In this document: in pieces, positions 4,208 through 36,881 of the stretch
Position numbering within the stretch: position 1 is the first letter of the stretch
Layout: every line of letters begins with the position of its first letter
Virus record (IMG/VR): IMGVR_UViG_3300042922_001182
Span: 1-64,000 of that record
DNA: 64,000 bases
Direction: 5' to 3' (one strand)
The notes under the pieces: model-generated
What the model was told of the DNA's origin: nothing
The model's input: only the letters and a program-made list of their open reading frames with translations
The model's database searches: none
Program-made: the position numbers and the translations under genes

Positions 4208-4219
4208 AACAAGCAGTTA
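4208..4219 (+). promoter_or_regulatory. Putative late promoter AACA-N6-TA
   Basis: AACAagcagtTA, 18 nt before ATG4238. Confidence 0.65.
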
Positions 4220-4237
4220 TGAAGGAAGGAGGGTAGA

Positions 4238-5512
4238 ATGGCAACAGAGAAGGACGTCTACTCCGCCAGGGCGATGACCTCCGTGTCGGCTACCGTCAGC
4301 AGCCTCACGGGGATCCTCGCCAACGACATCCTGGCATCGGTTTTCCCCAAGGGCTTCTTCAAGAAGTTCAAGCCCGGCACCATCAACATCGGCAGCGCCG
4401 GGGCAGAGGACGAGGACGGGGTCCACCACAGCGCCCTGCCCTACCTGGCGATCGACCCCAGGTACGAGGAGCTCCCGGACCCGCTGTTCGACCCCTCGCC
4501 CCAGGCCAACTGGAAGAGCAGCTTCCTGAGCGCCCCGTTCGGCAGGCACTACCAGAAGGTCCTCGACGACCCGATCAACGGCAGGTTCATCTACGCCATC
4601 GGCAAGCGCATGCGGGTCAACTTCGAGGTCACCATCAAGGTGCAGGGCCGCCTGCAGGTCATGAACGTGCTGCACCACCTGATGTCCTCGTTCGAGCCCG
4701 ACGGCATGTTCTACTTCCAGAACGCCCAGCTGGACGCCAACGTCCCGACGCACTTCATGGAGATGCTGATGGACGCGGCGGAGACCGACAGGGAGTCCCC
4801 GGCGTCCGTCGAGGCCTTCCGGAGCTACGTCAGGATGCACAGCAGGCACATGATCGACCGCAAGCGGGACCTGTCGACCGGCAGGGATGTGTACGTCAAC
4901 GGCTTCCGGACCAACGTGCTGTGGAGCATGAACGGCAAGCCCTCCGGCGAGGCCAACCGCAACGGCGGCTCGGAGGACGGGTCCTCGGTGCAGGTGCAGT
5001 TCTCGGCGGAGCTGTGGTACCCCGCCCGCTATCTCCTGGAGATCCTGGCCGACCCGGACTACTGGGTGCCGAGGCACCCCGATTACGTCCCCGGCGTGGA
5101 CGACCCGGCGGACGGGCCCGGCGACTTCACCTTCCAGTTCAACGCCCAGCGCACCACCATCCCCACCGTCAGCGACGGCAAGTCCCTGGTGGAGAAGGTC
5201 GGGTTCGTAACGGAGGCCGAGGGCGACACGGACACGGTGCCGCTGGACGACGGCGTCCTGCCCGAGACCGCGCTGTACGTCATGAGGTACAACGTCGAGA
5301 AGGGATACGACAACTCCCTGTGCTTCGGGCACCTGCTGCTCAAGGACGGCGAGGAGCTGGACCCGGCCCTGGACTACGAGGTCAGCTACGAGGACAGGCT
5401 CCTCACGCTGTCCCAGCCGTTCCGTGGCTACCCCTACATCCTGGCGTTCTACGCGGACATCCCTAAGGTCAAGGAGAGGTACGACCTCGCCGTGGCAGAG
5501 GGCTTCGAGTAA
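4238..5512 (+). CDS. Hypothetical protein, probably late/virion structural
   Basis: 424 aa, strong AGGAGG SD, preceded by the late-type promoter. Confidence 0.75.
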   Translation: MATEKDVYSARAMTSVSATVSSLTGILANDILASVFPKGFFKKFKPGTINIGSAGAEDEDGVHHSALPYLAIDPRYEELPDPLFDPSPQANWKSSFLSAPFGRHYQKVLDDPINGRFIYAIGKRMRVNFEVTIKVQGRLQVMNVLHHLMSSFEPDGMFYFQNAQLDANVPTHFMEMLMDAAETDRESPASVEAFRSYVRMHSRHMIDRKRDLSTGRDVYVNGFRTNVLWSMNGKPSGEANRNGGSEDGSSVQVQFSAELWYPARYLLEILADPDYWVPRHPDYVPGVDDPADGPGDFTFQFNAQRTTIPTVSDGKSLVEKVGFVTEAEGDTDTVPLDDGVLPETALYVMRYNVEKGYDNSLCFGHLLLKDGEELDPALDYEVSYEDRLLTLSQPFRGYPYILAFYADIPKVKERYDLAVAEGFE

Positions 5513-5515
5513 AGA

Positions 5516-5551
5516 GATGAGAGCAACGACCGCTTGGTCGTTGCTCTCATC
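5516..5551. terminator. Hairpin between convergent genes
   Basis: 16-bp perfect stem GATGAGAGCAACGACC-gctt-GGTCGTTGCTCTCATC. Confidence 0.75.
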
Positions 5552-5559
5552 GTCATCTC

Positions 5560-6255
5560 TTAGAACCTGATCCTGCCACCGGCGCCGACGTACGGCGTGA
5601 TGCCGGACCCGTCGAAGCCGAGGCTGAGGCCGCCCGTGACGAACAGGGGTGTCTCGGGGATCACGACGGAGACGCCCGCCCCCACCTGGGAGAAGTTCAT
5701 CTGCAAGTCGATAGACGCCTCTGGCAGCGCCCCGGGGATGTCCTGACGGACGAGCTGGTAGTCGACGAACACGAGACCGCGCACCACGCCCACGCCGAGG
5801 CCCCACCGGGTCGGGTCGGACAGGTCGGAGCCCGAGGGGCCGAACCTGGGGCCGCTCACGGTCGGGGTGGTGGGGGGAGCACTGGGGGTAACGACCGCAG
5901 CACCAGCCCCCGCGTCGGACCCGGAGGTGGCCGTCTGGTCCTGCTCCACCTCGATCTCCATGTAGGGGACCGGGGTGGCGTGGAGCACGACGCCGTCCTC
6001 CACGTTCGGGATGACGGGGGCGCTGGACCCCTCCGGGGCCGGGGTGGCGACGCGGGTGAGCGGCACGCGGATGACCACCCGCTGCTTGCCGGTGGCGGTG
6101 GCCTGGGCCTTCGCCTGGGCGGACGCCTCGACGGTGGGGACCGGCGGGGCCGACGGGGAGGCGACGGGGGCGGGTCCGGGCTGGGCGAGCAGCACGAACA
6201 GAGCCACCACCGCAGCGGCAGCCGCCGCCAACCAGAGGTAGACCTTCTTGTCCAT
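5560..6255 (-). CDS. Spanin-like membrane protein: N-terminal TM, Pro/Ala linker, beta-strand C-terminus ending in Phe
   Basis: TM at aa ~5-24; C-terminal RWGLGVGV...ITPYVGAGGRIRF; adjacent to holin-like genes. Confidence 0.6.
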   Translation of the reverse strand: MDKKVYLWLAAAAAAVVALFVLLAQPGPAPVASPSAPPVPTVEASAQAKAQATATGKQRVVIRVPLTRVATPAPEGSSAPVIPNVEDGVVLHATPVPYMEIEVEQDQTATSGSDAGAGAAVVTPSAPPTTPTVSGPRFGPSGSDLSDPTRWGLGVGVVRGLVFVDYQLVRQDIPGALPEASIDLQMNFSQVGAGVSVVIPETPLFVTGGLSLGFDGSGITPYVGAGGRIRF

Positions 6256-6281
6256 AACGTTCTCCTTCTCTTCTGGGATGC

Positions 6282-6293
6282 TATCAAAGTGTT
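6282..6293 (-). promoter_or_regulatory. Putative late promoter AACA-N6-TA
   Basis: Minus strand AACActttgaTA, 26 nt before start 6255. Confidence 0.65.
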
Positions 6294-6335
6294 AGGCGCG
6301 ATCGGGGGTTACCCGATCGCGCTCTGATTTTGTCC

Positions 6336-6578: not shown

Positions 6579-6587
6579 GATTCCCTC

Positions 6588-7271
6588 CTACTTGAAAAGC
6601 TTCTCGGAGATGCTGGGCCAGGCCGCCCAGAGACCGGCCACGCCGGTGGCGACGATGCCAGCGCCCTTGGCGGCGATCTCCAGGGCCTTGCTGGAGCCGA
6701 GGAACGCCTTGACGACCTCGACCTTGCCCGCGCCCTCCTCGGCGTCCTTCTTGTCCTTCTTGCCCTTGGCGGCGGCCTCCTCGGCCTTCCTCTCGGCGAG
6801 GGCCTGGGCCTCCTCGGCCTTGGCAACGCGGTCTTCGAGGAGGTCCTCCTTCCAGTCTTCGAGGACGGCGGTCCTCTCGACGAGGGTGTTGACGATCTCG
6901 GTGAGGGGTTCGAGGCGGGCGATCTTGCCCTCGTGCTCCATGATGTGCTCGAACGCGCTGTTCTGCTTCTCCACGAGCTTCTCGATGGAGGAGGTCAGCC
7001 TGGAGATCTCCTTCAGGGACTGGGCCTGCATGAAGGACAGCTCCTTCACCTCCTGGAGGAGGCCCTTGCCCATGTTGTCGATGCCGCCGCTGTAGAGCTC
7101 TATGAGCTTCGCGACGCTCTTGCTGAGGTCGTGGACGTCCCCGGCGGTCTCGTCCTCGTGCTTCGCCTGCCTCTTCGCCAGCGTCTGAACGACCATCAAG
7201 ATGTCCTTGGTCGAGACGCCGTCATCCGGAGTGGCGCCAGTACGGTCGCCCTTCTTGTTACTTCCAGCCAT
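6588..7271 (-). CDS. Coiled-coil protein with C-terminal TM (holin/antiholin-like)
   Basis: Heptad-rich helical body; C-terminal GAGIVATGVAGLWAAWP. Confidence 0.55.
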   Translation of the reverse strand: MAGSNKKGDRTGATPDDGVSTKDILMVVQTLAKRQAKHEDETAGDVHDLSKSVAKLIELYSGGIDNMGKGLLQEVKELSFMQAQSLKEISRLTSSIEKLVEKQNSAFEHIMEHEGKIARLEPLTEIVNTLVERTAVLEDWKEDLLEDRVAKAEEAQALAERKAEEAAAKGKKDKKDAEEGAGKVEVVKAFLGSSKALEIAAKGAGIVATGVAGLWAAWPSISEKLFK

Positions 7272-7355: not shown

Positions 7356-7367
7356 TATCGTAGTGTT
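7356..7367 (-). promoter_or_regulatory. Putative late promoter AACA-N6-TA
   Basis: Minus strand AACActacgaTA upstream of start 7271. Confidence 0.6.
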
Positions 7368-7961: not shown

Positions 7962-10061
7962 CTAGAGCTCGATGACCAGTAGGCCACCGTAGACGGTACC
8001 GGTGCCAGAGGTGACCTTAGCCGAGACCTGGAAGTTGTGGGGGCCAGCCGTTGGGGTCACCACGGCCCAAGCCGTAATGGGGATCTCCTCGTTGGCGATG
8101 TAGGTGTTGTAGGTGGGCTCGGCCGCATCCGTCAGCACGACGTCGTCCATCATCAGCCTCACCGAGGTGCTACCGGTCGAGAGGGAGTTCTTGACCTGGC
8201 CGGAGAACAGGAAGAGCATCCTGCGCCCGGTGCAGTTGGGCGTGCAGGTGTTGCCGAGGGGGACGAAGGTGGTGGAGGTGACGGTCGGGAACCCCAGGTC
8301 GGTCGAGGCCACTGGGTGCCCACGGTGGTGCCTCCGAGAGTGATCGATGAGAGCCCTCACCATCTGCATGTCATCCTGGGGGTAAACCTGGCGGTCGTCG
8401 ATCACCTGCACGGCGCACGGGAGGATGTCTATGGAGTCGATGGTGAACTGCTTCCCGGTGGAGGAGGCGTTCTTGGTGTTCGTCGCCATTATGGTGACGT
8501 CGTAGTAGCCGTAGTCTGGCCCGGAGTAGGTGAAGACCGGGCTGATGTCGTTGGGAGCGGCCTTGTAGGTGTCCACGGTTCCGTTGTCGATCCCGTTGAC
8601 GATGACCCTGAAGATACCCGTGTCCGTCTGCCTCTTGGCCCAGATCTGGAAGCCGCTCCCTGTGAACTTGAAGTTACAGTAGTCGGTGGCGTTGAGGTTG
8701 GTGTTGACGCTCTTCCGCCCGCCCGTGATCGAGGGATCGTCGTAGTAAGCCCACCCGGAGCCAAGGTAGAGCATCCTCGTATTGGCGGGGGACTTCACCC
8801 AGCCGGTGGCCGGGGTGGGGAACACGCGGGCGAGCCTGACCGCGCCCTCCGGCAGGGCCGGGGCCTTCGGCCGGTAGGTGAAGAAGGCGCGGATATCCAC
8901 GATGTAGTAGTTCGATAGGGCATTCTTGGTGCCCATCTTCCGAAGCTTTACCTTATGGGTTCCGTAGTGCAGGTTGTAGCCGATACCAGCCAACACCACC
9001 CCGTTGACGGCGGCGTAGAGGTCGATGGACCCCTTGACCACCCCGTCCACCGAGTACTCGACGTAGCCCATATCCGGACCGGTTCCGAACTCTACGGCCA
9101 AACCGGTGCCAACGAAGATGACCTCCATGAAGTCGGTGTTCGTGGTGTTGCTATCGCTGTTATCCCCGGTGTGCCCGAGGCGCACCCAAGTTGGGGCAGA
9201 AGTTCGCCTGGTAACCCAGGCGTGGAAGTAGTCCCCAGTCGTATCCCCTGCGGATACCCTGGCCAGGCTCCTTTCGTTATTCTCCAGGAAGGTTGCGTAG
9301 GTCCCACCTGCGGTGGGCTCCCCCTGGATGACCGTGGGGGCCGTGGCCCCCGGCATCAGCACCACCAGGTCCTGGCGGCCGTGCTCGGAGGACCCGGAGA
9401 GCGGCTGGATGCTCAGGCTCCCGGCCGTCTCCACCTCCGCTAGCCTCCCCCCGGGGTACGCCTTCCCGGGGACGTACCGCACGGAGCTGTCGTAGGTAGT
9501 GGTTATCTCAAAACCGCCGATGGCAACGAGGAAATCGTTGGCGAAGGCATTCTTCGTCCCCTTGACTGTAATGGTGGTCTCGTGATCTCCGTACTCACGG
9601 GTAGAGATACCCAGGACGTAGCCGTAGCTGGTCAGCGCAGCACCACCGAGATCAGCCTCCGTCGGATCCTCGCCGTCGGTGGAGTACTCGAACACACCCC
9701 GGTTTGGATGCCACAGGGTGACGAGGCTGAGTACCGTACCCCTCCATCGGATGGTGACGGTACTGCCAGGGACAGTCGTCTGGACGAAGCAGGGGGCAGC
9801 GTGCGAGGGTAGCTCCGGGTTGTTCCTGGCGAAGCCCCAAAAGTACCCGGCATCGCCGAAGTTCGTATCATATCGAACCCACGGGCCGTTGAGCGTTATC
9901 CTCCCGTCCCTGGGGGTGAGCCTCCCCGTTAACGGGTCCGGATCGCTCTCGATCGTCACCCTCTCCGTACCGCCCTCGATGCGGAGATCCGATTCCGAGT
10001 GAACGCCGTGGGGAAGCCTGTCCGCAATCGCCGTCAGCCCTAGCACTTTGCTTTGAATCAT
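7962..10061 (-). CDS. Tail-associated receptor-binding protein, paralog 3 of 3 (repeated CBM-like beta-sandwiches)
   Basis: MIQxxVLxL start; three FxGT...SxDG...GxH...TKNA modules; 699 aa. Confidence 0.75.
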   Translation of the reverse strand: MIQSKVLGLTAIADRLPHGVHSESDLRIEGGTERVTIESDPDPLTGRLTPRDGRITLNGPWVRYDTNFGDAGYFWGFARNNPELPSHAAPCFVQTTVPGSTVTIRWRGTVLSLVTLWHPNRGVFEYSTDGEDPTEADLGGAALTSYGYVLGISTREYGDHETTITVKGTKNAFANDFLVAIGGFEITTTYDSSVRYVPGKAYPGGRLAEVETAGSLSIQPLSGSSEHGRQDLVVLMPGATAPTVIQGEPTAGGTYATFLENNERSLARVSAGDTTGDYFHAWVTRRTSAPTWVRLGHTGDNSDSNTTNTDFMEVIFVGTGLAVEFGTGPDMGYVEYSVDGVVKGSIDLYAAVNGVVLAGIGYNLHYGTHKVKLRKMGTKNALSNYYIVDIRAFFTYRPKAPALPEGAVRLARVFPTPATGWVKSPANTRMLYLGSGWAYYDDPSITGGRKSVNTNLNATDYCNFKFTGSGFQIWAKRQTDTGIFRVIVNGIDNGTVDTYKAAPNDISPVFTYSGPDYGYYDVTIMATNTKNASSTGKQFTIDSIDILPCAVQVIDDRQVYPQDDMQMVRALIDHSRRHHRGHPVASTDLGFPTVTSTTFVPLGNTCTPNCTGRRMLFLFSGQVKNSLSTGSTSVRLMMDDVVLTDAAEPTYNTYIANEEIPITAWAVVTPTAGPHNFQVSAKVTSGTGTVYGGLLVIEL

Positions 10062-12644: not shown

Positions 12645-14795
12645 CTATATCGTGGTGTTTACCGGGAGCTCGCCCACCTCCATCACGAGGAGCCTACCGG
12701 AGTAGGTCGCCGTACCGCCGGACACCTTCACGCTGATGCCGAAGTCGTGTAGACCTGGAGACGGACAAGCCACAAAGGCCAAGGTGGTTATCGGCATGTA
12801 CTCGTTAGCCGTGGCAGTAGCGTAGTCGTTATCTGCATGGTCGACAACCTCTAGGACTACGCCATCCATATGAGGTTTGATGGACGAGACGGCCGTGGAG
12901 GTGTTGTTGGTCACCTGCCCGGAGAAAAGGAGCAGGATCGGCCTGCCGGAGCAGTCCATGTAGGCCCTGTCGCCGACGGGAACGGGGGTGAGGCTGGTGG
13001 TGGTGACCGCGCTGTAGCTCACAGAAGAGTTCTGCCTCTTCTTGTCGTGGTGCTTCCTCTCGTGCTCTCTCAAGACGGAGATCAACGCATCCTTACCAAG
13101 GGGGTCCGTCTCGCGCAGGTCCTTCACGTAGGGGATGGCAGGCCTGACCTCGATGCAGTCGATGTTGATTGCGTAGCCCGTTGCTGAGGAATGCTTTGCA
13201 TTCGTGGTACGCACCGTGACGGTGTGGTAGCCGCCGTGGGGGAGGGTGCCGGAGGTGTACTGGACCGCATCGAACAGCTGAACTGGGTCGTAGGTAGTCA
13301 CCTGCGCGGTCAGGACGCCGTCCACAAGGACGTCGTACCAGCCCCCGACGGCCGGACCCTTGTTCCCCCTCAGCCTGAACTTGTCCCCGGTGAAGCCGAA
13401 GGTCAGGGTGTCCGTGGTGTTGGTGTTAGCGTTGTTCCAGGTGGTGCCCATGGACAGCGGCTCGTTGGTGTTGAGCAGCCAGTTAGCACCTTCCTGCAAG
13501 CCGAGCTCGGTGCTCTCGTGCCTTATCCATGCGTCCGAGGGGTACTGCACCGCCTCGCAGAGCGCCATGGCATCCGACGGAACATCTGGGGCCTTCGGGT
13601 GATAGACATTGTAGCCACCGATCAGGATGCTGTAGCCGGAAGAGCTGGCGTTCTTCGTGCCGGTCTTCCTCACCTTCAGCTGGTGGTAGCCGAAAGGGAG
13701 GTTGTAGGCGAGTACCTGCGTCCTGGCGGTATCGACGAGAGAATACGCGTCGACGGTGGTCTCCGCCCCTCCGTCGATGGACCACGCGAATATGCCCCGC
13801 TGGGACTGCCCGTTGAAGAGAATCTCGATCCCCGTGCCGATGAAGCCGATCACCTGGAAGTCCACGCCGGTCGCGTCGTCAGCTGCGGGCCCGGGGCCTC
13901 CCAGCCGGATCAGCTTGGGGTTGACGTCAAGCGTCGACGCGTTGGTGGAGTAGACCCGGCCGAGCACGCCCGTGCCGTCGCTGGCCCCGATGTGGAAGGC
14001 GACCTCGCTCTTAGAGAGGAACGTCGCAAGGCTGTCGCCCGCGCTGGTGGGATCCCCCTGGATCACCTCCGGGGCTTCGGCCCCCGCCCTCAGAATGACC
14101 AAGTCCCTTCGGGCGCTGGCCGTCCCGAGGGTCGGAAGGGAGAGGGTACCGGCGAGGACGCTGGTAGGGCGGACTTTGATGAACGCCGTTCCGGCCTTAT
14201 ACGCCAAAGTGCTGTCCAGACCGCGCACGACGTCGAAGCCCTCGATGCGGACCACCATGTCCGTGGCCGACGCGTTCTTGCTGCTGGAGACGGTGATGAC
14301 CGTGGTATGGGGCCCGTTGTTCAACCCGGAGGCGATAAGCCTTGGAATGCCGTCGATCGCGCTGTTGTTCCAGTTGTCGTACTGCACGGAAGCGCCTCCA
14401 TCCGTGGAGACCGTGTACATGCCGGAGCCGCCCCATCGGGTGCTGTAGATTACCAGGTCGGTACCCTCCCAGTTGATCGTCAGCTGCTGACCCGCCCGCC
14501 CCGTGAAGACCCTGAAGTTCAGCCCGACCTGGGGCAGGGCGGGGTTATTCCCGGCAGGGGTCCCCGCGTACCCAGGGAGGCCGAAGAACGGGCTGTGCGA
14601 CGCGGTCCATGAGGAGGACCCCTTGATGGAGAGTCGGTCGTCGTCGAAGACGAGCTCGTTCGTCAGGGGCTCCCAGTACGCGTTCAGGCTGATGCGCTCG
14701 ATGCCCGCCATGACGCGGATGTCATCTTGCGACAGGACAGTGTCGCGAAGCACGCCCTGGAGGGGTGAAAGGTCAAGCACTTCTTCCTGGATCAT
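12645..14795 (-). CDS. Tail-associated receptor-binding protein, paralog 1 of 3
   Basis: Same architecture (RRDLVILRAG..PEVIQG, YNLPxGYH, KNASS); 716 aa. Confidence 0.75.
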   Translation of the reverse strand: MIQEEVLDLSPLQGVLRDTVLSQDDIRVMAGIERISLNAYWEPLTNELVFDDDRLSIKGSSSWTASHSPFFGLPGYAGTPAGNNPALPQVGLNFRVFTGRAGQQLTINWEGTDLVIYSTRWGGSGMYTVSTDGGASVQYDNWNNSAIDGIPRLIASGLNNGPHTTVITVSSSKNASATDMVVRIEGFDVVRGLDSTLAYKAGTAFIKVRPTSVLAGTLSLPTLGTASARRDLVILRAGAEAPEVIQGDPTSAGDSLATFLSKSEVAFHIGASDGTGVLGRVYSTNASTLDVNPKLIRLGGPGPAADDATGVDFQVIGFIGTGIEILFNGQSQRGIFAWSIDGGAETTVDAYSLVDTARTQVLAYNLPFGYHQLKVRKTGTKNASSSGYSILIGGYNVYHPKAPDVPSDAMALCEAVQYPSDAWIRHESTELGLQEGANWLLNTNEPLSMGTTWNNANTNTTDTLTFGFTGDKFRLRGNKGPAVGGWYDVLVDGVLTAQVTTYDPVQLFDAVQYTSGTLPHGGYHTVTVRTTNAKHSSATGYAINIDCIEVRPAIPYVKDLRETDPLGKDALISVLREHERKHHDKKRQNSSVSYSAVTTTSLTPVPVGDRAYMDCSGRPILLLFSGQVTNNTSTAVSSIKPHMDGVVLEVVDHADNDYATATANEYMPITTLAFVACPSPGLHDFGISVKVSGGTATYSGRLLVMEVGELPVNTTI

Positions 14796-29593: not shown

Positions 29594-30532
29594 CTACCTG
29601 AGGATTCGGGTCACGGCGTTGTAGACGTCGGGGGAGACGTTACCGGCGACCTGCTCCACCTGGTAGTCCCTGGTGATGCGGGAACCGGCGAGGGCCCCGG
29701 CGAGGGTGTGGACGAGGGTCGGGAAGAACTCCACGGAGTAGACCGCGCCGTCGCCGTACATCTTCGCGTAGTTCTCCATGAAGCCCACGAAGGAGAGCCC
29801 CTGGAGGCCGTCGATGTGGGAGAGCTCGGCGAAGAAGCCGGGGAGGCTCCTGTACGCGTCGTCGCTGATCTGGGCACCGGCGGCGGACAGGGTGTTCTTG
29901 GTCGTGCCGTGCGTGGCGCAGTTCATCGCCAGCGACTCCGTGGTGTCGTTGTCGGACTTGCCGAGGACGTACAGCAGGAAGAACTTGGCGACCGAGTAGT
30001 GGATGATGTCCGACTTGAGGGCCTGGAGGTTGATGCCGTACATCCGGTCCAGGACCTGGCAGAACATCTGGGAGTACGCCTTGGAGGCGGACTTGAGGAC
30101 GTCCGAGTCCATGGTCAGCTTGTTCCAGTTCTCGTAGGAGCCGAGCAGGATGGTACCGGCCTGGAGGAGGCCGAACAGCACCCGGGGCTCGATGGTGAAC
30201 TGACCCTCTCGGTTCTTCGTGGTGAAGGCCCCGAGGTTCACGACCGCCTGGGCGTTGCCCGTTGAGGGCTCCCTGCGCAGGAAGGCCGGGATGGCCGTCG
30301 TGAGCTGGATCTTGGTGGGGTTGTAGATGAGCAGCGTGCGCCCCGAGTTCAGGTCGGAGAGCACCCTCTCCTTCAGGGCGAAGGACAGTCGGCGCTTGAT
30401 CGTCGCGAGTGCGTCGTCCAGCAAGCCGTCGGTCACCGCGTCGGCGGTCGTGTTCACGGACTGCATGGTCTTGACCAGCCCCGACTTGGAATCCATGAGC
30501 CGAAAGAGCTCAAGCTCCATCATGCTTCTCAT
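29594..30532 (-). CDS. Hypothetical late protein, first gene of the tail operon
   Basis: ATG30532 after GAAAGGAAG; late promoter at 30585-30596. Confidence 0.75.
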   Translation of the reverse strand: MRSMMELELFRLMDSKSGLVKTMQSVNTTADAVTDGLLDDALATIKRRLSFALKERVLSDLNSGRTLLIYNPTKIQLTTAIPAFLRREPSTGNAQAVVNLGAFTTKNREGQFTIEPRVLFGLLQAGTILLGSYENWNKLTMDSDVLKSASKAYSQMFCQVLDRMYGINLQALKSDIIHYSVAKFFLLYVLGKSDNDTTESLAMNCATHGTTKNTLSAAGAQISDDAYRSLPGFFAELSHIDGLQGLSFVGFMENYAKMYGDGAVYSVEFFPTLVHTLAGALAGSRITRDYQVEQVAGNVSPDVYNAVTRILR

Positions 30533-30584: not shown

Positions 30585-30596
30585 TAATAACTTGTT
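30585..30596 (-). promoter_or_regulatory. Putative late promoter AACA-N6-TA heading the 23-kb tail operon
   Basis: Minus strand AACAagttatTA in an AT-rich divergent intergenic region. Confidence 0.65.
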
Positions 30597-30797
30597 ACCT
30601 CTGGTGAACGTGAACAGAGCTTGTAAGGAAACACCTAAGTATAAACCGAAAACCCCCTCAACAACACCAGAAGTAGACAGGTTTCCGAAACCCTATTCTA
30701 TATATTAGGAACGAACCGTACACCCACTTAGGGTATTCGCGCAGGGGTGCGCGGACAGAACCGACAACGTACTGCTGAAACTGCAAGGAGAAGCGGA

Positions 30798-31118
30798 ATG
30801 ATCAACATTTTCAAGGAACTCGTGGACGAGGCGAAGGAGAATCTCAAGAACGACGTCAAGAGGTTCGGGTGGGTCAGGGTCATGCTGCTGGAGCTGGTCG
30901 ACATCCTCTTCATCTCCCTCCTGTTCTACTGCTCGCACAGGGCGGGTAGCGACAACCGGATCGCCACCGCATGGGTCTGCGGCTTCCTGGCGGTCGTCGG
31001 CTACCCCCGCATCCGCAACGTCGTGACCAACCGGATCGGCAACGGTCCCCTGGCGTCGTTCTCCGTCTTCGCCTTCGGCCTCACCCTCCTGGGCTTGGCC
31101 GTCTACTTCGACCGCTAG
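30798..31118 (+). CDS. Three-TM membrane protein
   Basis: AAGGAG SD before ATG30798; three hydrophobic segments. Confidence 0.7.
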   Translation: MINIFKELVDEAKENLKNDVKRFGWVRVMLLELVDILFISLLFYCSHRAGSDNRIATAWVCGFLAVVGYPRIRNVVTNRIGNGPLASFSVFAFGLTLLGLAVYFDR

Positions 31119-32261: not shown

Positions 32262-32285
32262 GATTTTCGCGTCAGGGGCCCCGCT

Positions 32286-32297
32286 AACACCCTGATG
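32286..32297 (+). promoter_or_regulatory. Putative AACA-N6-TG promoter
   Basis: AACAccctgaTG, 43 nt before the helicase ATG. Confidence 0.55.
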
Positions 32298-32340
32298 ACG
32301 GCGGGGCCCACCGCCACCGCTAGAGACCAAGGGAGACGAG

Positions 32341-34065
32341 ATGAAGACCAAGAAAAAGCGACAGCAGGACATCAAGATCCGGTTCGACCTGTCGATCAAT
32401 ATCCTCGACCTGATGATCGGGTACATCCTGTCGGCCAACGCCAGCGTCACCAAGAAGTCCATGGTGAAGATGCGGGAGCTGTTCTACCGGCTGGACGACA
32501 GCTCGTTCGACGAGGACCGGCAGATGGAGGTCCGCATCTTCATGGTGAAGAAGCTCCTCAAGCGGTTCCTGGACGATCGGCTCACCGATCTCGACCTGCT
32601 GGCGCAGTCCATCCTGGGCGGCCAGTACGACGAGGACGTCCTGGAGGTCTACGAGCAGCTGAACGACTTCGGGGACCTGAGCAACGACGAGGTCCACTTC
32701 GTCGACAAGTGGGTGTCTGACCGCCTCGCCCACTACTACCTGTTCACCTGCCAGGAGGAGATGGATGACCTGATGATCCGCTTCAAGAGCGGCGACTTCA
32801 GCGACCTGGGAGAGTTCACCGACGAGTTCCGGGAGACGATCAGCGGGCTCCACGGCCTGATGCGCAACGCCCAGGCCCAGTCCAAGCACGCCAACGCGGA
32901 CTTCTCCACCGACTTCGACTCCCTGGCCCTCGCCGTGGACCAGACGATCACGGAGCTGAAGCGGCCGTCGAACGTCCTCAGGACCGGCGTCAAGGAGCTC
33001 AACCGTATGCTCGGGCCCGGCGGCTTCCAGGGCGGGCGCTCCTACCTGTTCCTCGCCATCTCCGGCGGCTGGAAGAGCGGCATGCTGCTCAACGCCTGCC
33101 AGTGGTCCCTCAGGTACAACCAGGGGCTCACGACGAAGGACCCCACCAAGCGCCCCGGTATCCTGCTGGTCTCCCTGGAGAACAGCACGGGTGAGACCAT
33201 CGAGCGCATGTACTCCTACTACGTCGGGATGGACAGCGACCTCAAGGACGCCGACCCGAACGAGGTGGCCCGTGCCATGCGCCTGGGCGTCCCGGACGAC
33301 GACAAGGAAGGACCCGTCCTTCTCGTCAAGTACCGTCCGAGCAAGTCGATCAACGTCGCGGACGTCGATGCGATGTGCGACGAGGCGGAGCTGGACGGCA
33401 TCGAGATCGTCGCGGTCGTCATCGACTACATCAAGCGCATCCGCTCCAACAACCCCGATCCGGAGCTCCGCATCGAGCTAGGCAACGCCATGGACGACAT
33501 GGCCTCACTGGCGAAGGCCCGCAAGATCCCCGTGATCACGGCCTCGCAGCTCAACCGCGAGGCGTTCAAGGTCATCGAGCAGATGGCCGACAAGAAGGTG
33601 GACATGGCGAAGCAGCTGGGCATGTCCCACATCGGCGAGTCCACCCTGATGATCGAGAACGCCGACTTCGTCGCAGTCCTGCAGCGCGAGACCCAGGCCT
33701 CCACGGGCAAGAAGTTCCTGACCGTGAAGAAGCTCAAGATTCGCGGCAAGGACACCCCCTCCAGCTACATCGCCCACCCGATGTACAACGACATGAAGCT
33801 GGAGGAGGACGTCGACCTCAAGGACAGCCTCAGCCTCAAGAGCATCGGCGACGGGCTGGCCGGGTTCGACCCTCAGACGCAGGGGCCCGGCGCCACCAGG
33901 GTTCCCAGCCCGGACGCGCCTTCCACAGGGGCCCCGCGAAGGGGCAACAGCCGCCTTCCCTCCATCAACCGGGTCCCCGCAGCGCCGACACCAACCGAGG
34001 CGGTGGCGACGGTTCCCAAGGCCACAGAGGACGACATCGAGGACTACTTCGAGGCCGGGGTCTAG
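32341..34065 (+). CDS. dnaB: DnaB-like replicative helicase
   Basis: TGVKELN, Walker A variant AISGGWKS, VSLEN, IDYIK, ASQLNR, ENAD. Confidence 0.88.
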   Translation: MKTKKKRQQDIKIRFDLSINILDLMIGYILSANASVTKKSMVKMRELFYRLDDSSFDEDRQMEVRIFMVKKLLKRFLDDRLTDLDLLAQSILGGQYDEDVLEVYEQLNDFGDLSNDEVHFVDKWVSDRLAHYYLFTCQEEMDDLMIRFKSGDFSDLGEFTDEFRETISGLHGLMRNAQAQSKHANADFSTDFDSLALAVDQTITELKRPSNVLRTGVKELNRMLGPGGFQGGRSYLFLAISGGWKSGMLLNACQWSLRYNQGLTTKDPTKRPGILLVSLENSTGETIERMYSYYVGMDSDLKDADPNEVARAMRLGVPDDDKEGPVLLVKYRPSKSINVADVDAMCDEAELDGIEIVAVVIDYIKRIRSNNPDPELRIELGNAMDDMASLAKARKIPVITASQLNREAFKVIEQMADKKVDMAKQLGMSHIGESTLMIENADFVAVLQRETQASTGKKFLTVKKLKIRGKDTPSSYIAHPMYNDMKLEEDVDLKDSLSLKSIGDGLAGFDPQTQGPGATRVPSPDAPSTGAPRRGNSRLPSINRVPAAPTPTEAVATVPKATEDDIEDYFEAGV

Positions 34066-34068: not shown

Positions 34069-34080
34069 AACAACCCCATA
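34069..34080 (+). promoter_or_regulatory. Putative late promoter AACA-N6-TA
   Basis: AACAaccccaTA, 30 nt before GTG34111. Confidence 0.6.
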
Positions 34081-34110: not shown

Positions 34111-34443
34111 GTGGAAAAGCAAGATATCACCGGCGCCGAGAGCCTTCGGGACTACCTCGTGTCCAAGGCCGAAGAGATGCAGGGCCCGCTTGACGAGCTC
34201 GGCGTCCTCAACGGAGACGGAGAGCTCGACGAGACCGCCCTGGATGCCCTGGATGAGGAGACTCGTCAGGGTGCGTGCTGCAACTACGCCGCCATGGTGA
34301 CCTACCAGGACGCCGTGGCGGCGTACGACGTCGCCGCAGAGGCGTCCAGCAGCGAGATCGAGGACCTGGACCTCGACGACGTGGGCGGCGATGACGAGGA
34401 GTACTCGGAGGAGTACTACGACGAAGGCGCCCCCATCCTCTAA
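34111..34443 (+). CDS. Small, highly acidic protein
   Basis: GAGGAGG SD; D/E-rich, 110 aa. Confidence 0.75.
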   Translation: MEKQDITGAESLRDYLVSKAEEMQGPLDELGVLNGDGELDETALDALDEETRQGACCNYAAMVTYQDAVAAYDVAAEASSSEIEDLDLDDVGGDDEEYSEEYYDEGAPIL

Positions 34444-34484: not shown

Positions 34485-34491
34485 TCTTGCT

Positions 34492-34938
34492 TTACTTCAA
34501 CGGGTCGATCGTGATGTCCGGGATCACGAGCGGCTCCTCCCTGCTGAGGGCGATCCGCTTCTTGGCACCCTCCAGGATGGAGTTCAGGACCTCCATCTTC
34601 TGGGGGTCGTACGCCTTGATCGTGTTGCCCGGGGTGAACTCGACCTTACTGGGGGCGTCGTTGGCCCACAGGATGAGGTACCACAGGTCCGCCGTGCCGT
34701 AGATCCTCTGGGCGATGACCTCCGGTCGGTGGGCGGCCTCCGGGCCGACGGTGTAGTCTACCAGGTTATTCATGATGAAGTCCATGTACTCCAGGAGGAT
34801 CACCTGGTCGTCCATCACCACCCCGTCGATCGACACCTTCTCGGAGATGTTGGTCAGAGTCAGCTTGTTGGTGCTGGCGTGCTCCACGGACTGGGTCAGC
34901 GTCATGAACCGGCTGCTGTCGTAAGCGCTTAGATTCAC
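34492..34938 (-). CDS. Baseplate wedge protein, T4 gp53/LysM-like
   Basis: RPEVIAQRIYGTADLWYLILWAN motif. Confidence 0.75.
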   Translation of the reverse strand: MNLSAYDSSRFMTLTQSVEHASTNKLTLTNISEKVSIDGVVMDDQVILLEYMDFIMNNLVDYTVGPEAAHRPEVIAQRIYGTADLWYLILWANDAPSKVEFTPGNTIKAYDPQKMEVLNSILEGAKKRIALSREEPLVIPDITIDPLK

Positions 34939-34948
34939 CTTGTTACCC

Positions 34949-35524
34949 TCACTTCTTGTACTCGTTGTAGATCAGCCTGATGTTGTCCATGTCCAGTTTA
35001 GGCCCCAGCTGGACGTCGTACCGGAGGCGGCTGGACGCCAGGGAGTCCCTCCACCCCGCCATCAGGCAGTCGTCCAGGCTCACGATCCTGCTGCGGTCGA
35101 GGCCGTACTCCTTGGCCATGGGGCCAAGCACCTTGTCGCAGAGGTGCTCGATCATGCGCCTCTCTGCCTGTTGGTAGGAGAAGTCGTCCCCCACCAGGAC
35201 GAGCAGGGAGTGGCGGTACCTCTCGTAGATCACGTAGTTGTCCGCCAGGTCGTCGATGAAGTAGCTCCTCTCGGTCAGGCCGACGCCGTTGAGGACCGCG
35301 TAGTCGTCCCCGATGAGCTCCGTGAAGAAGTGGCAGGGGACCGACCGACGCTTGAGCTCGACGTGGAAGTAGCGCTGCCAGGCGCCCCATGTGTAGACGT
35401 AGCTCCCCCCGAAGCGCACGTCCGGGCTGAGGTGGGTGGTGTTCTCGTAGAGGTTCCTCGCCTGGGAGATGATGATGTAGTCCGTCCTCATCCTGCCCCT
35501 GCGGTCGTTGAATATCTGGTACAA
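34949..35524 (-). CDS. Degenerate amidase-2-fold protein in the baseplate operon
   Basis: PCHFF..., SLLVLVGDDFS..., KEYGLDRSRIV pattern; Zn-binding His residues not evident. Confidence 0.45.
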   Translation of the reverse strand: MYQIFNDRRGRMRTDYIIISQARNLYENTTHLSPDVRFGGSYVYTWGAWQRYFHVELKRRSVPCHFFTELIGDDYAVLNGVGLTERSYFIDDLADNYVIYERYRHSLLVLVGDDFSYQQAERRMIEHLCDKVLGPMAKEYGLDRSRIVSLDDCLMAGWRDSLASSRLRYDVQLGPKLDMDNIRLIYNEYKK

Positions 35525-35533
35525 GGCTTCCTC

Positions 35534-36034
35534 CTAGCTCTGGCTGAGTTTACCCGGCCCGCCGCCCACGGGCGGGGGCATGACGATGGCTACCGCGACC
35601 CCGTCGTGGATGGCCCTGGCGACCTTCTTGCCCATGTCCTCCCTGGACGTCCCCTCGGCGGGGATGCTGGTGAAGATGGGTAGGAGGTTGGCGTTGACCG
35701 CCGCGATGACGAGTGCCGCAGAGGGGGCCGACGTTGCCCCCGTGGGCCCCACGCCAGCGCCGATGGCGGTGCCCACGGCCGCCGCGATGGCCATGGCCGT
35801 CAGGGTCCCACCTGCGGCGGTGGGGGTGGACCAGATGCCCGCCAGGGTACCGGCCAGCCCCGGGGTCCCGATGCCCGTCAGCGGCCCGTAGGCCCCAGGC
35901 GTCGTCGCCAGGCCGCCCAGCAGGTAGGTGTTGATCGGCCCCGCCCACCTGGCACCGGCGTCGACGGCGCTGTCGGGGAAGGACTTCACGGCGTTCACCA
36001 GCCCCGATTCGAGCTGGGAGTAGGATAGCGTCAC
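35534..36034 (-). CDS. Ala/Gly-rich structural protein downstream of the spike gene
   Basis: 166 aa; GAGGAG SD; operon position. Confidence 0.65.
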   Translation of the reverse strand: MTLSYSQLESGLVNAVKSFPDSAVDAGARWAGPINTYLLGGLATTPGAYGPLTGIGTPGLAGTLAGIWSTPTAAGGTLTAMAIAAAVGTAIGAGVGPTGATSAPSAALVIAAVNANLLPIFTSIPAEGTSREDMGKKVARAIHDGVAVAIVMPPPVGGGPGKLSQS

Positions 36035-36043
36035 TGTCTCCTC

Positions 36044-36847
36044 CTAGTTCACGACGTGCTTGGTCGAGAGGTGGGCCGCGCCGTTCATCGGGATCATCGG
36101 GGGGCTACTAGGGCCCATGGGGGTCATCACGGTCATGGCGTTGTACAGGGCCATGAAGGCGTCCCCCTTGACGATGTGCTCCGACGCCCCGCCGCCGACG
36201 TCCACCTTGTCGGACTTCAGCACCACGTCCTTCGACTCCACCACGGTCTTGGCGGCCACCACCGTCACGAGGCCCGGTTGGACCACCACGCTGGTCTTGT
36301 CGTCCAGGACGAAGAACAGCGTGGGCTTGCTCTCGTTGAAGTCGCACCCGATGATGGCCCCGTTGGGGAACTCCTCGATGATGTGGATCTTCGACCGCTT
36401 CTTCTCGTCGTCCCAGTTGGCCTTGACGGACTCCGGGAGGAGCTTGGCCGGGATGACCTGGCCCTTGCGGGTCATGGCCCTGGGGTCGTAGTAGCACTTG
36501 GAGGGGTCGCCGTCGAGGAAGATGACCGTGACCTCGGAGCCGAGCTGGGTGGGCCTGTACTCGCCCCCGACCACGACCTCGCCGTCGACGTACTGGTTCC
36601 ACATGGGCCTGGCCCAGTAGGCGTTCAGAGTCTTGACCGTCGAGTCCGAGCTGAGCTTCTCCTCGTTGACCGCGATACCGGGGTCCGCCGTCTCCTGCCC
36701 CGGTTTGAGCTCCTTGCCGACCTCGTAGGCGGGCATCAGGCTGGGGATGTAGACGGCGACCCTCCCCTCCTTGAGGGGGTCGTCCTGGGACACCACGATG
36801 CCCCTCTTGTAGCCCTCAAGGCAGGGCGGCTCGATATTGCTGCTCAT
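36044..36847 (-). CDS. gp5/VgrG-like baseplate central spike (OB-fold plus beta-helix)
   Basis: GIVVSQDDPLKEGRVAVYIP, GSEVTVIFLDGDP; C-terminal VKGD...TPMGPSSPP. Confidence 0.8.
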   Translation of the reverse strand: MSSNIEPPCLEGYKRGIVVSQDDPLKEGRVAVYIPSLMPAYEVGKELKPGQETADPGIAVNEEKLSSDSTVKTLNAYWARPMWNQYVDGEVVVGGEYRPTQLGSEVTVIFLDGDPSKCYYDPRAMTRKGQVIPAKLLPESVKANWDDEKKRSKIHIIEEFPNGAIIGCDFNESKPTLFFVLDDKTSVVVQPGLVTVVAAKTVVESKDVVLKSDKVDVGGGASEHIVKGDAFMALYNAMTVMTPMGPSSPPMIPMNGAAHLSTKHVVN

Positions 36848-36869
36848 GGCGCTCCTCCGTTACTATTCA

Positions 36870-36881
36870 CATGGGATTGTT
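36870..36881 (-). promoter_or_regulatory. Putative late promoter AACA-N6-TG heading the baseplate operon
   Basis: Minus strand AACAatcccaTG, 22 nt before ATG36847. Confidence 0.65.

What the first reader, a model, noticed from the sequence alone, without database searches (positions are those of the whole stretch)
4208..36881. AR9-type late promoter (AACA-N6-TA/G) heads each late operon of a GC-rich jumbo phage
Seen: seven intergenic, correctly oriented AACA-N6-T(A/G) sites 18-85 nt before starts: 4208-4219(+), 6282-6293(-), 7356-7367(-), 30585-30596(-), 32286-32297(+), 34069-34080(+), 36870-36881(-). They precede the tail operon, baseplate operon, lysis-like genes and the helicase. Known: this is the late-promoter consensus of Bacillus phage AR9 non-virion RNAP, which reads it via deoxyuridines in the template strand; characterised U-DNA jumbo phages (AR9, PBS1, phiR1-37) are AT-rich. 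Inference: this is either a GC-rich uracil-DNA phage or a thymine-DNA relative whose sigma-like subunit kept the motif but lost U-dependence. Either would be a new variant of this transcription system.
Basis: partly seen in the sequence, partly recalled or inferred. Interest (0 to 1): 0.85.

Follow-up and report, generated by a model that had tools for sequence, protein, structure and literature searches.

The report
AR9-type late promoters, GC-rich jumbo phage
A 239-kb, 64% GC uncultured jumbo phage carries the same short late-promoter signal (AACA-N6-TA/G) and the same promoter-reading RNA polymerase subunit as the AT-rich uracil-DNA Bacillus phage AR9, which makes it a new GC-rich member of that family and probably a uracil-DNA phage.

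Summary
All seven sites exist as described. I read 98.4% of the parent contig, a circularly closed genome of ~238.9 kb. In its upstream regions AACA-N6-T(A/G) occurs 48 times against 4.7±2.1 in shuffles. The count peaks only at a spacer of exactly 6, only for the AACA core and only for TA/TG. In co-directional gaps there are 25 sense and 2 antisense sites. AACA-N6-TA is the top-ranked of 45,056 dyads. The raw window excess (34 vs 17) is mostly a codon and repeat artefact.

The phage encodes all five AR9-type non-virion RNAP subunits, including a full-length gp226 homolog. Many sites precede orthologs of AR9 genes with mapped late promoters at similar 5'-UTR lengths.

The uracil-versus-thymine question cannot be settled from sequence, but the evidence leans to uracil (~65-70%). 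The gp226 valine that excludes thymine is kept. A homolog of the validated PBS1 dTMP phosphatase and an HD-family nucleotidase are present. No thymidylate synthase or dUTPase was found. Against uracil, no dCTP deaminase and no Ugi homolog were found.

Verdict: a new GC-rich member of a known system.

The parts
4208..4219 (+). Late-promoter consensus AACAAGCAGTTA, 19 nt before gene 4238-5512 (AR9 g251 homolog). It follows a hairpin plus T-run terminator at 4170-4201.
   Evidence: AR9 g251 has a mapped consensus late promoter with a 65-nt UTR
6282..6293 (-). Late-promoter consensus AACACTTTGATA, 27 nt before gene 5560-6255. It lies 2 nt after an 11-bp GC hairpin.
7356..7367 (-). Late-promoter consensus AACACTACGATA before gene 6588-7271 (or 6588-7196), with a UTR of 85 or 160 nt.
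30585..30596 (-). Late-promoter consensus AACAAGTTATTA, 53 nt before 29594-30532 (AR9 g281 homolog). This gene is the first of the ~23-kb minus-strand structural gene block 7422-30532.
   Evidence: AR9 g281 has a mapped late promoter with a 26-nt UTR
30630..30641 (+). It is the divergent partner of the 30585 site, 157 nt before 30798-31118, which is followed by SbcD.
32286..32297 (+). Late-promoter consensus AACACCCTGATG, 44 nt before the DnaB-like helicase gene 32341-34065 (AR9 g007 homolog). It lies in the loop of a 10-bp GC hairpin.
   Evidence: AR9 g007 has a mapped late promoter with a 32-nt UTR
34069..34080 (+). Late-promoter consensus AACAACCCCATA, 31 nt before gene 34111-34443.
36870..36881 (-). 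Late-promoter consensus AACAATCCCATG, 23 nt before 36044-36847 (AR9 g012 homolog). This gene is the first of the baseplate block 34492-36847.
   Evidence: AR9 g012 has a mapped late promoter with a 20-nt UTR
12648..12659 (-). Weaker candidate late promoter AACACCACGATA. It occupies the last four codons of gene 12645-14795, 43 nt before the next fibre-like gene 10494-12605.
   Evidence: AR9 also has internal late promoters
39323..39334 (+). Weaker candidate late promoter AACAAAGCAATA at the end of the RNase H gene, ahead of a 288-nt gap and gene 39624-40106.
1458..1472 (+). Early-promoter-like CATATCAT-N6-G ahead of 1714-2346 and the nvRNAP beta' N-terminal gene.
   Evidence: AR9 g270 has a mapped early promoter with a 161-nt UTR
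3784..3798 (+). Early-promoter-like CACATTAT-N6-G, 29 nt before 3827-4039.
44800..44814 (+). Early-promoter-like CATATTAT-N6-G, 25 nt before 44839-45258.
50932..50946 (+). Early-promoter-like CACATTAT-N6-G, 21 nt before 50967-51329.
53316..53330 (+). Early-promoter-like CATATAAT-N6-G, 131 nt before the topoisomerase II large subunit gene 53461-55842 (AR9 g024 homolog).
   Evidence: AR9 g024 has a mapped early promoter with a 109-nt UTR
58114..58128 (+). Early-promoter-like CATATTAT-N6-G, 62 nt before 58190-59245.
63464..63478 (+). Early-promoter-like CATATTAT-N6-G, 65 nt before the gene starting at 63543.
2363..3736 (+). Gene for the N-terminal half of the non-virion RNAP beta' subunit (AR9 g270 homolog). 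It is the only subunit of the polymerase presumed to read the late promoters that lies inside the window.
   Evidence: 37% identity to AR9, E 3e-77

Best explanation
The AACA-N6-T(A/G) sites are late promoters of this phage's own non-virion multisubunit RNA polymerase, working as in Bacillus phage AR9.

The proposed sequence of events is as follows. A virion-packaged RNAP transcribes early genes from CACATATTAT-N6-G promoters. Among the early products are the four split beta/beta' subunits and a gp226-like specificity subunit. That holoenzyme binds the template-strand complement of AACA at -11 to -8 and initiates at the A or G that follows the T. It drives the structural genes (portal, sheath, capsid, tape measure, baseplate, virion RNAP) and also some replication genes.

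What is shown: the motif, its spacing, its orientation, its genome-wide enrichment, the presence of all five polymerase subunits, and positional agreement with AR9's mapped promoters.

What is inferred: that transcription starts at these sites, and that recognition is on the template strand.

A further inference, with my probability about 0.65-0.7: the genome is dU-DNA and recognition is uracil-dependent as in AR9. If so, dUTP supply differs from PBS1, phiR1-37 and the roseophage, because no phage dCTP deaminase was found.
For: Motif statistics.
- Genome-wide there are 48 sense sites in 16.4 kb of upstream DNA against 4.71+-2.08 in shuffles.
- The N6 spacer gives 48 sites, against 4-11 for every spacer from N2 to N11.
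- In co-directional gaps there are 25 sense and 2 antisense sites.
- None of the 12 single-base variants of AACA is enriched, and only TA (37 vs 3.5 expected) and TG (11 vs 3.9) are enriched at the start.
- AACA-6-TA ranks first of 45,056 dyads, Bonferroni p 1.4e-19.
- The result replicates in a hold-out region.

Cognate enzyme.
- beta'N is at window 2363-3736.
- betaC, betaN and beta'C are at contig 73.7, 83.8 and 145.0 kb.
- The gp226 homolog is at contig 189,471-190,922: hhalign probability 100%, E 8.7e-55, 452 aligned columns, in AR9-like synteny.

Orthology with AR9.
- Sites precede homologs of AR9 g251, g281, g007, g012, g052, g114 and of the portal, sheath, capsid and virion RNAP genes.
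- The AR9 copies have mapped late promoters, often with near-equal UTRs: 31 vs 28, 36 vs 38 and 23 vs 20 nt.
- The 2x2 test gives p = 0.005.

Other support.
- There are no sigma-70-like promoters in 20 kb (0 vs 2.2 expected).
- Three other GC-rich relatives show the same N6-specific peak.

Evidence for dU-DNA.
- The gp226 2.1bis helix reads TRYSDKVLW, keeping Val206. In AR9 the substitution V206G is what allows T at -10 (PMC9209446).
- betaN R363 is conserved.
- A homolog of the experimentally validated dTMP phosphatase Dtm_PBS1 is present (phmmer E 9e-29, catalytic DxDxV motif intact).
- Among 50,697 cultured phage records that family occurs only in 19 AR9/PBS1, S6 and LPJP1-type phages.
- An HD-family YfbR-like 5'-deoxynucleotidase lies next to the DNA polymerase genes, in the same enzyme family as the roseophage Dtm.
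- No thymidylate synthase or dUTPase was found in 98.4% of the genome.
Against: - No transcription start site has been mapped for this phage, so promoter function rests on homology and statistics.
- 46 of 110 upstream regions of at least 40 nt carry neither consensus.
- The ortholog 2x2 test weakens to p = 0.066 when restricted to genes that have their own upstream gap.
- Two sites (1602, 32286) are embedded in hairpins.

Against dU-DNA specifically:
- No dCTP/dCMP-deaminase homolog and no zinc-deaminase motif occurs in any six-frame ORF of at least 60 aa, although all three characterised dU phages encode a Dcd.
- No Ugi homolog was found.
- betaN K375, which hydrogen-bonds the -10 uracil in AR9, aligns with Asp here, and gp226 I207 is Leu.
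- 3.7 kb of the genome (166,561-170,297) was not read.
Confidence: 0.8

Rival explanations
1. The sites are real late promoters of the phage's non-virion RNAP, but the genome is ordinary thymine DNA. The polymerase would then read 3'-TTGT-5' in the template strand, having become uracil-independent through changes other than the known Val206 switch.
For: - No phage dCTP deaminase and no Ugi homolog was found, while every characterised dU phage has a Dcd.
- betaN K375 aligns with Asp and gp226 I207 with Leu, so the -10 pocket is not identical to AR9's.
- At 64% GC, short AT-containing motifs are rare in a high-GC genome, so the proposed role of uracil in keeping the polymerase off host DNA would matter less (argument from PMC7598289, plus inference).
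Against: - Val206, the one residue shown to exclude thymine, is retained here and in all six GC-rich family representatives examined.
- The phage keeps a catalytically intact homolog of the dTMP phosphatase Dtm_PBS1 and also an HD-type deoxynucleotidase. Both are hard to rationalise in a thymine phage.
- No thymidylate synthase or dUTPase was found.
- All cultured carriers of gp226 homologs belong to the known or presumed dU clade.
Confidence: 0.25
2. The motif marks something other than an nvRNAP promoter. Possibilities are a site read by host RNAP with a phage-encoded factor (as with T4 gp55), an RNA-processing site, or part of the terminator modules it often follows.
For: - Several sites lie directly after or inside GC hairpins.
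- No transcription start site data exist for this phage.
Against: - The consensus is identical in core, spacing and start dinucleotide to a motif shown to be a promoter in AR9, both by dRNA-seq and primer extension and by purified enzyme in vitro.
- The cognate specificity subunit is present.
- Sites precede gene starts at a median of 43.5 nt and in sense orientation.
- Most sites are not in hairpins.
- No sigma-70-like promoters were found.
Confidence: 0.05
3. The seven sites are a chance or compositional pattern picked out by eye in AT-richer intergenic DNA.
For: - Within the window alone the motif ranks 21st of 45,056 dyads and does not survive Bonferroni correction.
- The raw window excess is a codon and repeat artefact.
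Against: - The result replicates in a hold-out region.
- Genome-wide it ranks 1st, with Bonferroni p 1.4e-19.
- The spacer, core-variant and orientation controls are all specific.
Confidence: 0.01

Closest known systems
Bacillus phage AR9 (and PBS1/PBS2): late promoters AACA-N6-T A/G(+1), read by the five-subunit non-virion RNAP through gp226 on the uracil-containing template strand
   Same: - Identical consensus, spacer and start dinucleotide.
- All five subunits have homologs: gp226 at 28% identity over its full length, beta'N at 37%.
- Val206 is kept.
- An early-promoter core ATATTAT-N6-G is also shared.
- Extensive synteny, with late promoters before many of the same orthologous genes.
- A Dtm (dTMP phosphatase) homolog lies next to the DNA polymerase genes.
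   Different: - 64% GC rather than AT-rich.
- No dCTP deaminase and no Ugi homolog were found.
- An extra HD-family deoxynucleotidase is present.
- betaN K375 aligns with Asp and gp226 I207 with Leu.
- Known only from metagenomes (one JGI contig and one Logan run), so the host is unknown and no transcription start sites or DNA chemistry are available.
Yersinia phage phiR1-37 (dU-DNA jumbo phage of a Gram-negative host)
   Same: - Same clade by beta'N (34%) and gp226 (27%) identity.
- Two multisubunit RNAPs.
   Different: - phiR1-37 is AT-rich.
- It uses a dTTP pyrophosphatase (Dtt) plus a Dcd.
- Its transcriptome study did not yield a late-promoter consensus (PMC5312081). Here the motif stands out clearly.
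phiKZ-type (Chimalliviridae) non-virion RNAP with gp68 and late promoter TATG
   Same: - Split beta/beta' polymerase with a fifth sigma-like subunit.
- Independence from the host polymerase.
   Different: - Thymine DNA and a phage nucleus.
- A different, much shorter late motif.
- beta'N is only about 24% identical.
Roseophage DSS3_VP1 (small dU-DNA podovirus)
   Same: It has an HD-family dTMP phosphatase, the same enzyme family as the YfbR-like protein here, and shows that dU-DNA is not confined to AT-rich Firmicutes phages.
   Different: It is an unrelated virion type, has no multisubunit RNAP and no AACA promoters, and encodes a Dcd.

Membership tests
AR9-type nvRNAP late promoter | Consensus AACA, exactly six unspecified bases, then T followed by A or G | tested here: met
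   48 sites. The N6 spacer gives 48 against 4-11 for other spacers. Only the AACA core and only TA/TG are enriched. Top-ranked dyad genome-wide.
AR9-type nvRNAP late promoter | Lies upstream of genes in sense orientation, with 5'-UTRs of tens to a few hundred nt | tested here: met
   Median UTR 43.5 nt (interquartile range 31-87). 25 sense against 2 antisense sites in co-directional gaps. The AR9 range is 17-491 nt.
AR9-type nvRNAP late promoter | Cognate enzyme encoded: four split beta/beta' subunits plus a gp226-family specificity subunit | tested here: met
   beta'N, betaC, betaN and beta'C homologs at E 1e-77 to 1e-150. gp226 homolog at hhalign probability 100%, E 8.7e-55.
AR9-type nvRNAP late promoter | Transcription starts at the A/G following the T, late in infection | not testable with these tools
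   There is no transcriptome or culture. The only support is indirect: 18 of 25 motif-bearing genes with an AR9 ortholog match an AR9 gene that has a mapped late transcription start site.
AR9-type nvRNAP late promoter | Recognition of the template strand requires deoxyuridine at -11 and -10 | not testable with these tools
   Indirect only. Val206 of the 2.1bis helix and betaN R363 are conserved. betaN K375 is not conserved.
AR9-type vRNAP early promoter | AT-rich block ending in ATATTAT, then six bases, then G(+1) | tested here: met
   CA[TC]AT.AT-N6-G occurs 22 times in upstream regions against 0.21 in shuffles, with 14 sense and 0 antisense in co-directional gaps. It precedes the g270 and g024 homologs, as in AR9.
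dU-DNA phage (PBS1/AR9, phiR1-37, DSS3_VP1 pathways) | Thymidine-nucleotide hydrolase (Dtm or Dtt) | tested here: met
   A Dtm_PBS1 homolog lies at contig 137,991-138,689, with E 9e-29 and the DxDxV motif intact. There is also an HD YfbR-like protein at 143,201-143,833. Substrate specificity was not assayed.
dU-DNA phage (PBS1/AR9, phiR1-37, DSS3_VP1 pathways) | Phage dCTP deaminase (Dcd) supplying dUTP | tested here: not met
   No phmmer hit and no H[AVSC]E...PCxxC motif in any six-frame ORF of at least 60 aa across 98.4% of the genome. A 3.7-kb gap was not read.
dU-DNA phage (PBS1/AR9, phiR1-37, DSS3_VP1 pathways) | Uracil-DNA glycosylase inhibitor | tested here: inconclusive
   No Ugi homolog was found. 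UDG inhibitors are small and have arisen on several unrelated folds, so a sequence search cannot exclude one.
dU-DNA phage (PBS1/AR9, phiR1-37, DSS3_VP1 pathways) | No thymidylate synthase and no dUTPase | tested here: met
   There are no Pfam hits in the JGI gene tables or in my scans, and no signature motifs in called genes.
dU-DNA phage (PBS1/AR9, phiR1-37, DSS3_VP1 pathways) | Deoxyuridine replaces thymidine in virion DNA | not testable with these tools
   This needs nucleoside LC-MS, UDG sensitivity or raw nanopore signal.
phiKZ-type late promoter (TATG) and Chimalliviridae | RNAP closest to phiKZ-like phages, with a TATG-only late motif | tested here: not met
   beta'N is about 24% identical to phiKZ-like phages against 31-39% to the AR9 clade. 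gp226 homologs occur only in the AR9 clade among cultured phages. The upstream AACA element is obligatory here. Chimallin was not searched for.

The most novel reading that the evidence does not exclude
The phage has ordinary thymine DNA despite keeping Val206. It encodes no Dcd and no recognisable UDG inhibitor. Its nvRNAP would then read a thymine-containing template-strand TTGT element through a remodelled -10 pocket (betaN K375D, gp226 I207L). That would be a natural, previously unseen route to uracil-independent template-strand promoter recognition. The two dNMP phosphatases would then serve some other purpose.
Probability: 0.2. Interest if true: 0.75.

Novelty: new member of a known kind. 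Interest (0 to 1): 0.6.

Why it matters
- **Conservation across the clade.** The AR9 late-promoter consensus was defined experimentally in one AT-rich phage. [quoted passage not shown] Here the same 6-base signal is the strongest motif in the upstream DNA of a 64% GC genome. Promoter specificity of the gp226-type polymerase has therefore been conserved across very distant relatives (28% identity in gp226), and GC-rich members give a high-contrast system for mapping these promoters by computation alone.
- **Size of the family.** The gp226 family is far larger than the 21 cultured phage records suggest: 504 clusters at 50% identity, including several GC-rich lineages.
- **If it is a dU phage.** It would be the first GC-rich jumbo one, and it appears to lack its own dCTP deaminase, which would point to a different route to dUTP.
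- **A cheap decisive experiment.** Recombinant five-subunit enzyme on dU versus dT PCR templates would settle the uracil question.

Tried and rejected
- Megablast of 12 kb against 50,697 phage records gave no match.
- The whole-window motif excess (34 vs 17) is not promoter evidence. It comes from Asn-Thr-Ala/Val-Val codons in 120-nt repeats.
- The window-only de novo dyad scan was not significant after correction. It became decisive only with the whole genome.
- The word-indexed protein search with AR9 gp226 reached only close AT-rich relatives. The exhaustive profile search was needed.
- Two size-matched candidates for gp226, of 472 aa and 516 aa near 80-85 kb, were rejected by hhalign. The 472-aa protein is betaN.
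- An 84-aa ORF in the Ugi-like position has no similarity to Ugi.
- One-mismatch cores such as AACC before the g068 and Dda homologs looked attractive by eye, but are not enriched (11 vs 8.2).
- Thymidylate synthase and dUTPase signature regexes hit only non-coding frames.
- The metagenome-contig scan meant to close the 166.6-170.3 kb gap found nothing, so that collection evidently lacks the contig. One contig look-up returned only the near-identical Logan contig.
- There are no Rfam families and no tRNAs in the window.
- I did not run a structure prediction of the gp226 homolog, because the profile match is already unambiguous.

Full report
**What the window is**

The window is the first 64 kb of JGI metagenome contig 3300042922|Ga0456363_0000132 (238,984 bp), which is also held as IMGVR_UViG_3300042922_001182. 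I walked along the contig and read all of it except 166,561-170,297. Its first 127 nt recur at 238,858, so it is a circularly closed assembly of about 238.9 kb with 63.6% GC. Near-identical contigs occur in Logan run SRR35179700.

Megablast finds no cultured relative. Window 2363-3736(+) encodes the N-terminal half of a jumbo-phage RNAP beta' subunit. Its best matches are Bacillus phages Goe21, AR9 and PBS1 (37-39% identity), Yersinia phiR1-37 (34%), Listeria LPJP1 and Staphylococcus S6-type phages (about 31%). phiKZ-like phages reach only about 24%. Gene order from 30.8 kb onward follows AR9 genes g001-g024: a small ORF, SbcD, DnaB, a divergent baseplate block, Dda helicase and topoisomerase II.

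**Checking the observation**

All seven sites are present as stated, intergenic, and aimed at a start codon 19-85 nt downstream. The raw window count, 34 against 17.3 in shuffles, is misleading. 22 of the 34 sites are coding-sense, many of them AAC-ACC-GYC-GTG codons in 120-nt repeats of gene 22553-25627.

The relevant test is on upstream regions in the sense orientation.

| Region tested | Observed sites | Shuffle mean ± sd |
|---|---|---|
| Window upstream regions (3,567 nt) | 9 | 0.91 ± 0.93 |
| Hold-out, 64-102 kb of the same contig | 10 | 1.04 ± 1.02 |
| Whole genome, 128 upstream regions (16.4 kb) | 48 | 4.71 ± 2.08 (max 13 of 500) |

Within the window alone, an unbiased enumeration of 45,056 four-mer/gap/two-mer dyads ranks AACA-6-TA only 21st.

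The internal controls on the whole genome are clean.
- **Spacer.** N6 gives 48 sites, and every spacer from N2 to N11 gives 4-11.
- **Orientation.** Co-directional gaps hold 25 sense and 2 antisense sites.
- **Core.** None of the 12 single-base variants of AACA exceeds expectation.
- **Start dinucleotide.** Of 16 dinucleotides after the spacer, only TA (37 vs 3.5 expected) and TG (11 vs 3.9) are enriched.
- **De novo rank.** With the whole genome, AACA-6-TA is the top dyad of 45,056, with Bonferroni p 1.4e-19, ahead of the Shine-Dalgarno sequence and the early-promoter core.
- **Position -2.** It is A or T in 40 of 48 sites.
- **5'-UTR.** The median is 43.5 nt.

**What the sites are**

The published AR9 late-promoter consensus is AACA-(6N)-T A/G, with the last base as the transcription start. 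It was found at 94 of 118 non-early start sites and is read by the non-virion RNAP (PMC5312081 and PMC7598289). The match is therefore exact.

The cognate enzyme is fully encoded.

| Subunit | Location | AR9 counterpart |
|---|---|---|
| beta'N | window 2363-3736 | g270 |
| betaC | contig 73,653-75,590 | g089 |
| betaN | contig 83,807-85,225 | g105 |
| beta'C | contig 145,002-146,873 | g154 |
| specificity subunit | contig 189,471-190,922 | gp226 |

The specificity subunit is a 483-aa protein that aligns over its whole length to an AR9-type gp226 profile (hhalign probability 100%, E 8.7e-55, 28% identity to AR9 gp226). It sits in AR9-like synteny between the GroEL/g227 homologs and the primase. 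I confirmed the identity of the AR9 gp226 query against PDB 7S01 chain A.

Promoter positions agree with AR9's experimentally mapped start sites (AR9 Table S3).

| Site | Downstream gene (AR9 ortholog) | UTR here (nt) | UTR in AR9 (nt) |
|---|---|---|---|
| window 4208 | g251 | 19 | 65 |
| window 30585 | g281 | 53 | 26 |
| window 32286 | g007, DnaB | 44 | 32 |
| window 36870 | g012, baseplate | 23 | 20 |
| contig 66,915 | g052 | 31 | 28 |
| contig 87,855 | g114, protease | 36 | 38 |

Sites also precede the portal, sheath, major capsid, tape-measure and both large virion-RNAP genes. Over the 66 genes with an AR9 homolog, having the motif here is associated with a mapped late start site in AR9 ([[18,7],[15,26]], Fisher p = 0.005). 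The association drops to p = 0.066 when only genes with their own upstream gap are counted, so part of it reflects conserved operon structure. Host-type sigma-70 promoter matches are absent from 20 kb of the window (0 against 2.2 expected).

Upstream of the plus-strand replication and nucleotide-metabolism genes there is a longer motif, CA[TC]AT.AT-(6N)-G. It occurs 7 times in the window and 22 times genome-wide against 0.21 in shuffles. In co-directional gaps it is never antisense.

It shares its 3' core and its six-base distance to a G with the AR9 early (virion-RNAP) promoter AAATATATATTAT-(6N)-G(+1). It precedes the homologs of g270 and g024, whose AR9 copies have mapped early promoters. 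Both halves of the AR9 transcription programme are thus recognisable.

**Uracil or thymine**

This cannot be decided from sequence, but several tests bear on it.

Evidence for uracil:
1. In AR9 the -10 uracil sits in a pocket formed by the gp226 2.1bis helix and betaN. Val206 would clash with a thymine methyl group, V206G makes the enzyme accept T, and the valine is invariant in homologs from dU phages (PMC9209446). Here the helix reads TRYSDKVLWAYLKNM against AR9's TKYSDVVIWTYLKNM. Val206 is kept, I207 is Leu, betaN R363 is kept, and betaN K375 aligns with Asp. Among 150 family representatives the position is Val in 94, and it is Val in all six GC-rich representatives examined.
2. A 2025 study defined the dU pathway as a dCTP deaminase (Dcd) plus a thymidine-nucleotide hydrolase. 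The hydrolase is Dtm in PBS1 and in roseophage DSS3_VP1, and Dtt in phiR1-37 (PMC12697855). This phage encodes a homolog of Dtm_PBS1 at contig 137,991-138,689, with phmmer E 9e-29 and the HAD DxDxV motif intact, next to the DNA polymerase genes as in AR9. I verified that the AR9 '5'(3')-deoxyribonucleotidase' clusters with PBS1 gp39, which is UniProt A0A223LEB8, the assayed enzyme.
3. Among 50,697 cultured phage records, that family occurs in only 19, all of AR9/PBS1, S6 or LPJP1 type.
4. An HD-family YfbR-like 5'-deoxynucleotidase, the enzyme family of the roseophage Dtm, lies 4.5 kb away.
5. No thymidylate synthase or dUTPase was found in the JGI Pfam tables, in my Pfam scans or by signature motifs.

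Evidence against uracil:
1. No Dcd is detectable by phmmer or by the zinc-deaminase motif in any six-frame ORF.
2. No Ugi homolog exists.

A host dCTP deaminase, or reduction of uridine nucleotides by the phage's ribonucleotide reductase (window 40410-43004), could supply dUTP. That is inference. I put dU-DNA at about 0.65-0.7.

**Breadth of the family**

The gp226 family has 504 clusters at 50% identity in 1.84 billion representative proteins. It occurs in only 21 cultured phage records, all AT-rich. Three other GC-rich members (57-66% GC; loci L018, L019, L022) show the same N6-specific peak in their intergenic DNA. The motif is therefore a clade property rather than a peculiarity of this contig.

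**Verdict**

The interpretation as AR9-type late promoters is supported. The motif and the known specificity residue are unchanged, so the system is the known one in a new, GC-rich, uncultured lineage. What is new:
- the late promoters of this polymerase family can be found by computation alone in a GC-rich genome;
- both promoter classes are conserved at 28-40% protein identity;
- a probable dU phage appears to lack its own dCTP deaminase.

Transcription start sites, uracil content and uracil dependence remain untested.

Noticed in passing
window 1458-1472, 3784-3798, 44800-44814, 45591-45605, 50932-50946, 53316-53330, 58114-58128, 63464-63478 (all +): There is a second, longer promoter-like motif, CACATATTAT-(6N)-G, before replication and nucleotide-metabolism genes. 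It matches the core of the AR9 virion-RNAP early promoter. Genome-wide it occurs 22 times against 0.21 expected.
   Followed up: yes
window 32276-32309 (+) and 1594-1620 (+): Two AACA-N6-TG matches are embedded in GC hairpins. The DnaB-gene site lies in the loop of a 10-bp stem. The 1602 site is part of the stem itself, so it may be a terminator rather than a promoter. AR9 nvRNAP can initiate on single-stranded templates, so a loop-presented promoter is conceivable.
   Followed up: partly
window 30585-30641; also contig 83,558-83,571 (L015), 183,407-183,451 and 156,971-157,027: Late-type sites occur as back-to-back or overlapping divergent pairs driving both strands. At contig 83,558 the two sites overlap in a near-palindrome. 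AR9 Table S3 lists similar pairs (g051/g052, g114/g115).
   Followed up: partly
window 24600-25365 (inside gene 22553-25627, - strand): There are about six tandem copies of a 120-nt (40-aa) unit at 75-88% identity in a 1,024-aa structural protein. This repeat produces five of the in-gene AACA-N6-TG matches.
   Followed up: partly
window 7962-10061, 10494-12605, 12645-14795 (- strand): Three consecutive paralogous genes of about 700 aa have tail-protein-like central domains (phrog_15881, phrog_10059). They are followed by a Kelch/beta-propeller repeat protein at 14877-16016. This looks like a set of alternative receptor-binding proteins.
   Followed up: no
contig 1-127 and 238,858-238,984 (window 1-127): The contig ends overlap by 127 nt, which implies a circularly closed assembly and an essentially complete genome of about 238.9 kb. 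A near-identical phage is present in an independent Logan run (SRR35179700).
   Followed up: yes
L021:11436-11933 (contig 190,999-191,496), directly downstream of the gp226 homolog: A 165-aa protein carries a GmrSD N-terminal (DUF262-type) domain. That domain belongs to enzymes that restrict modified DNA, which is unexpected in a phage that may itself carry non-canonical DNA.
   Followed up: no
L035:5219-6040 (contig 142,312-143,184), between the DNA polymerase and the HD nucleotidase: A metallo-beta-lactamase-fold protein hits the Anti-Pycsar Apyc1 family in the JGI Pfam table and is weakly similar to AR9's 'metal-dependent hydrolase'. It is a possible cyclic-nucleotide-degrading anti-defence gene.
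   Followed up: no
window 1-64000: There are no tRNA genes and no Rfam family matches. Sigma-70-like promoter matches are below the shuffle expectation.
   Followed up: yes
late-site logo, positions -7 to -2 of all 48 sites: The spacer is not fully free. G is strongly depleted at -7 (2 of 48) and -5 (2 of 48) on the non-template strand, and -2 is A or T in 40 of 48 sites. In AR9 any such preference would be masked by the AT-rich background.
   Followed up: partly
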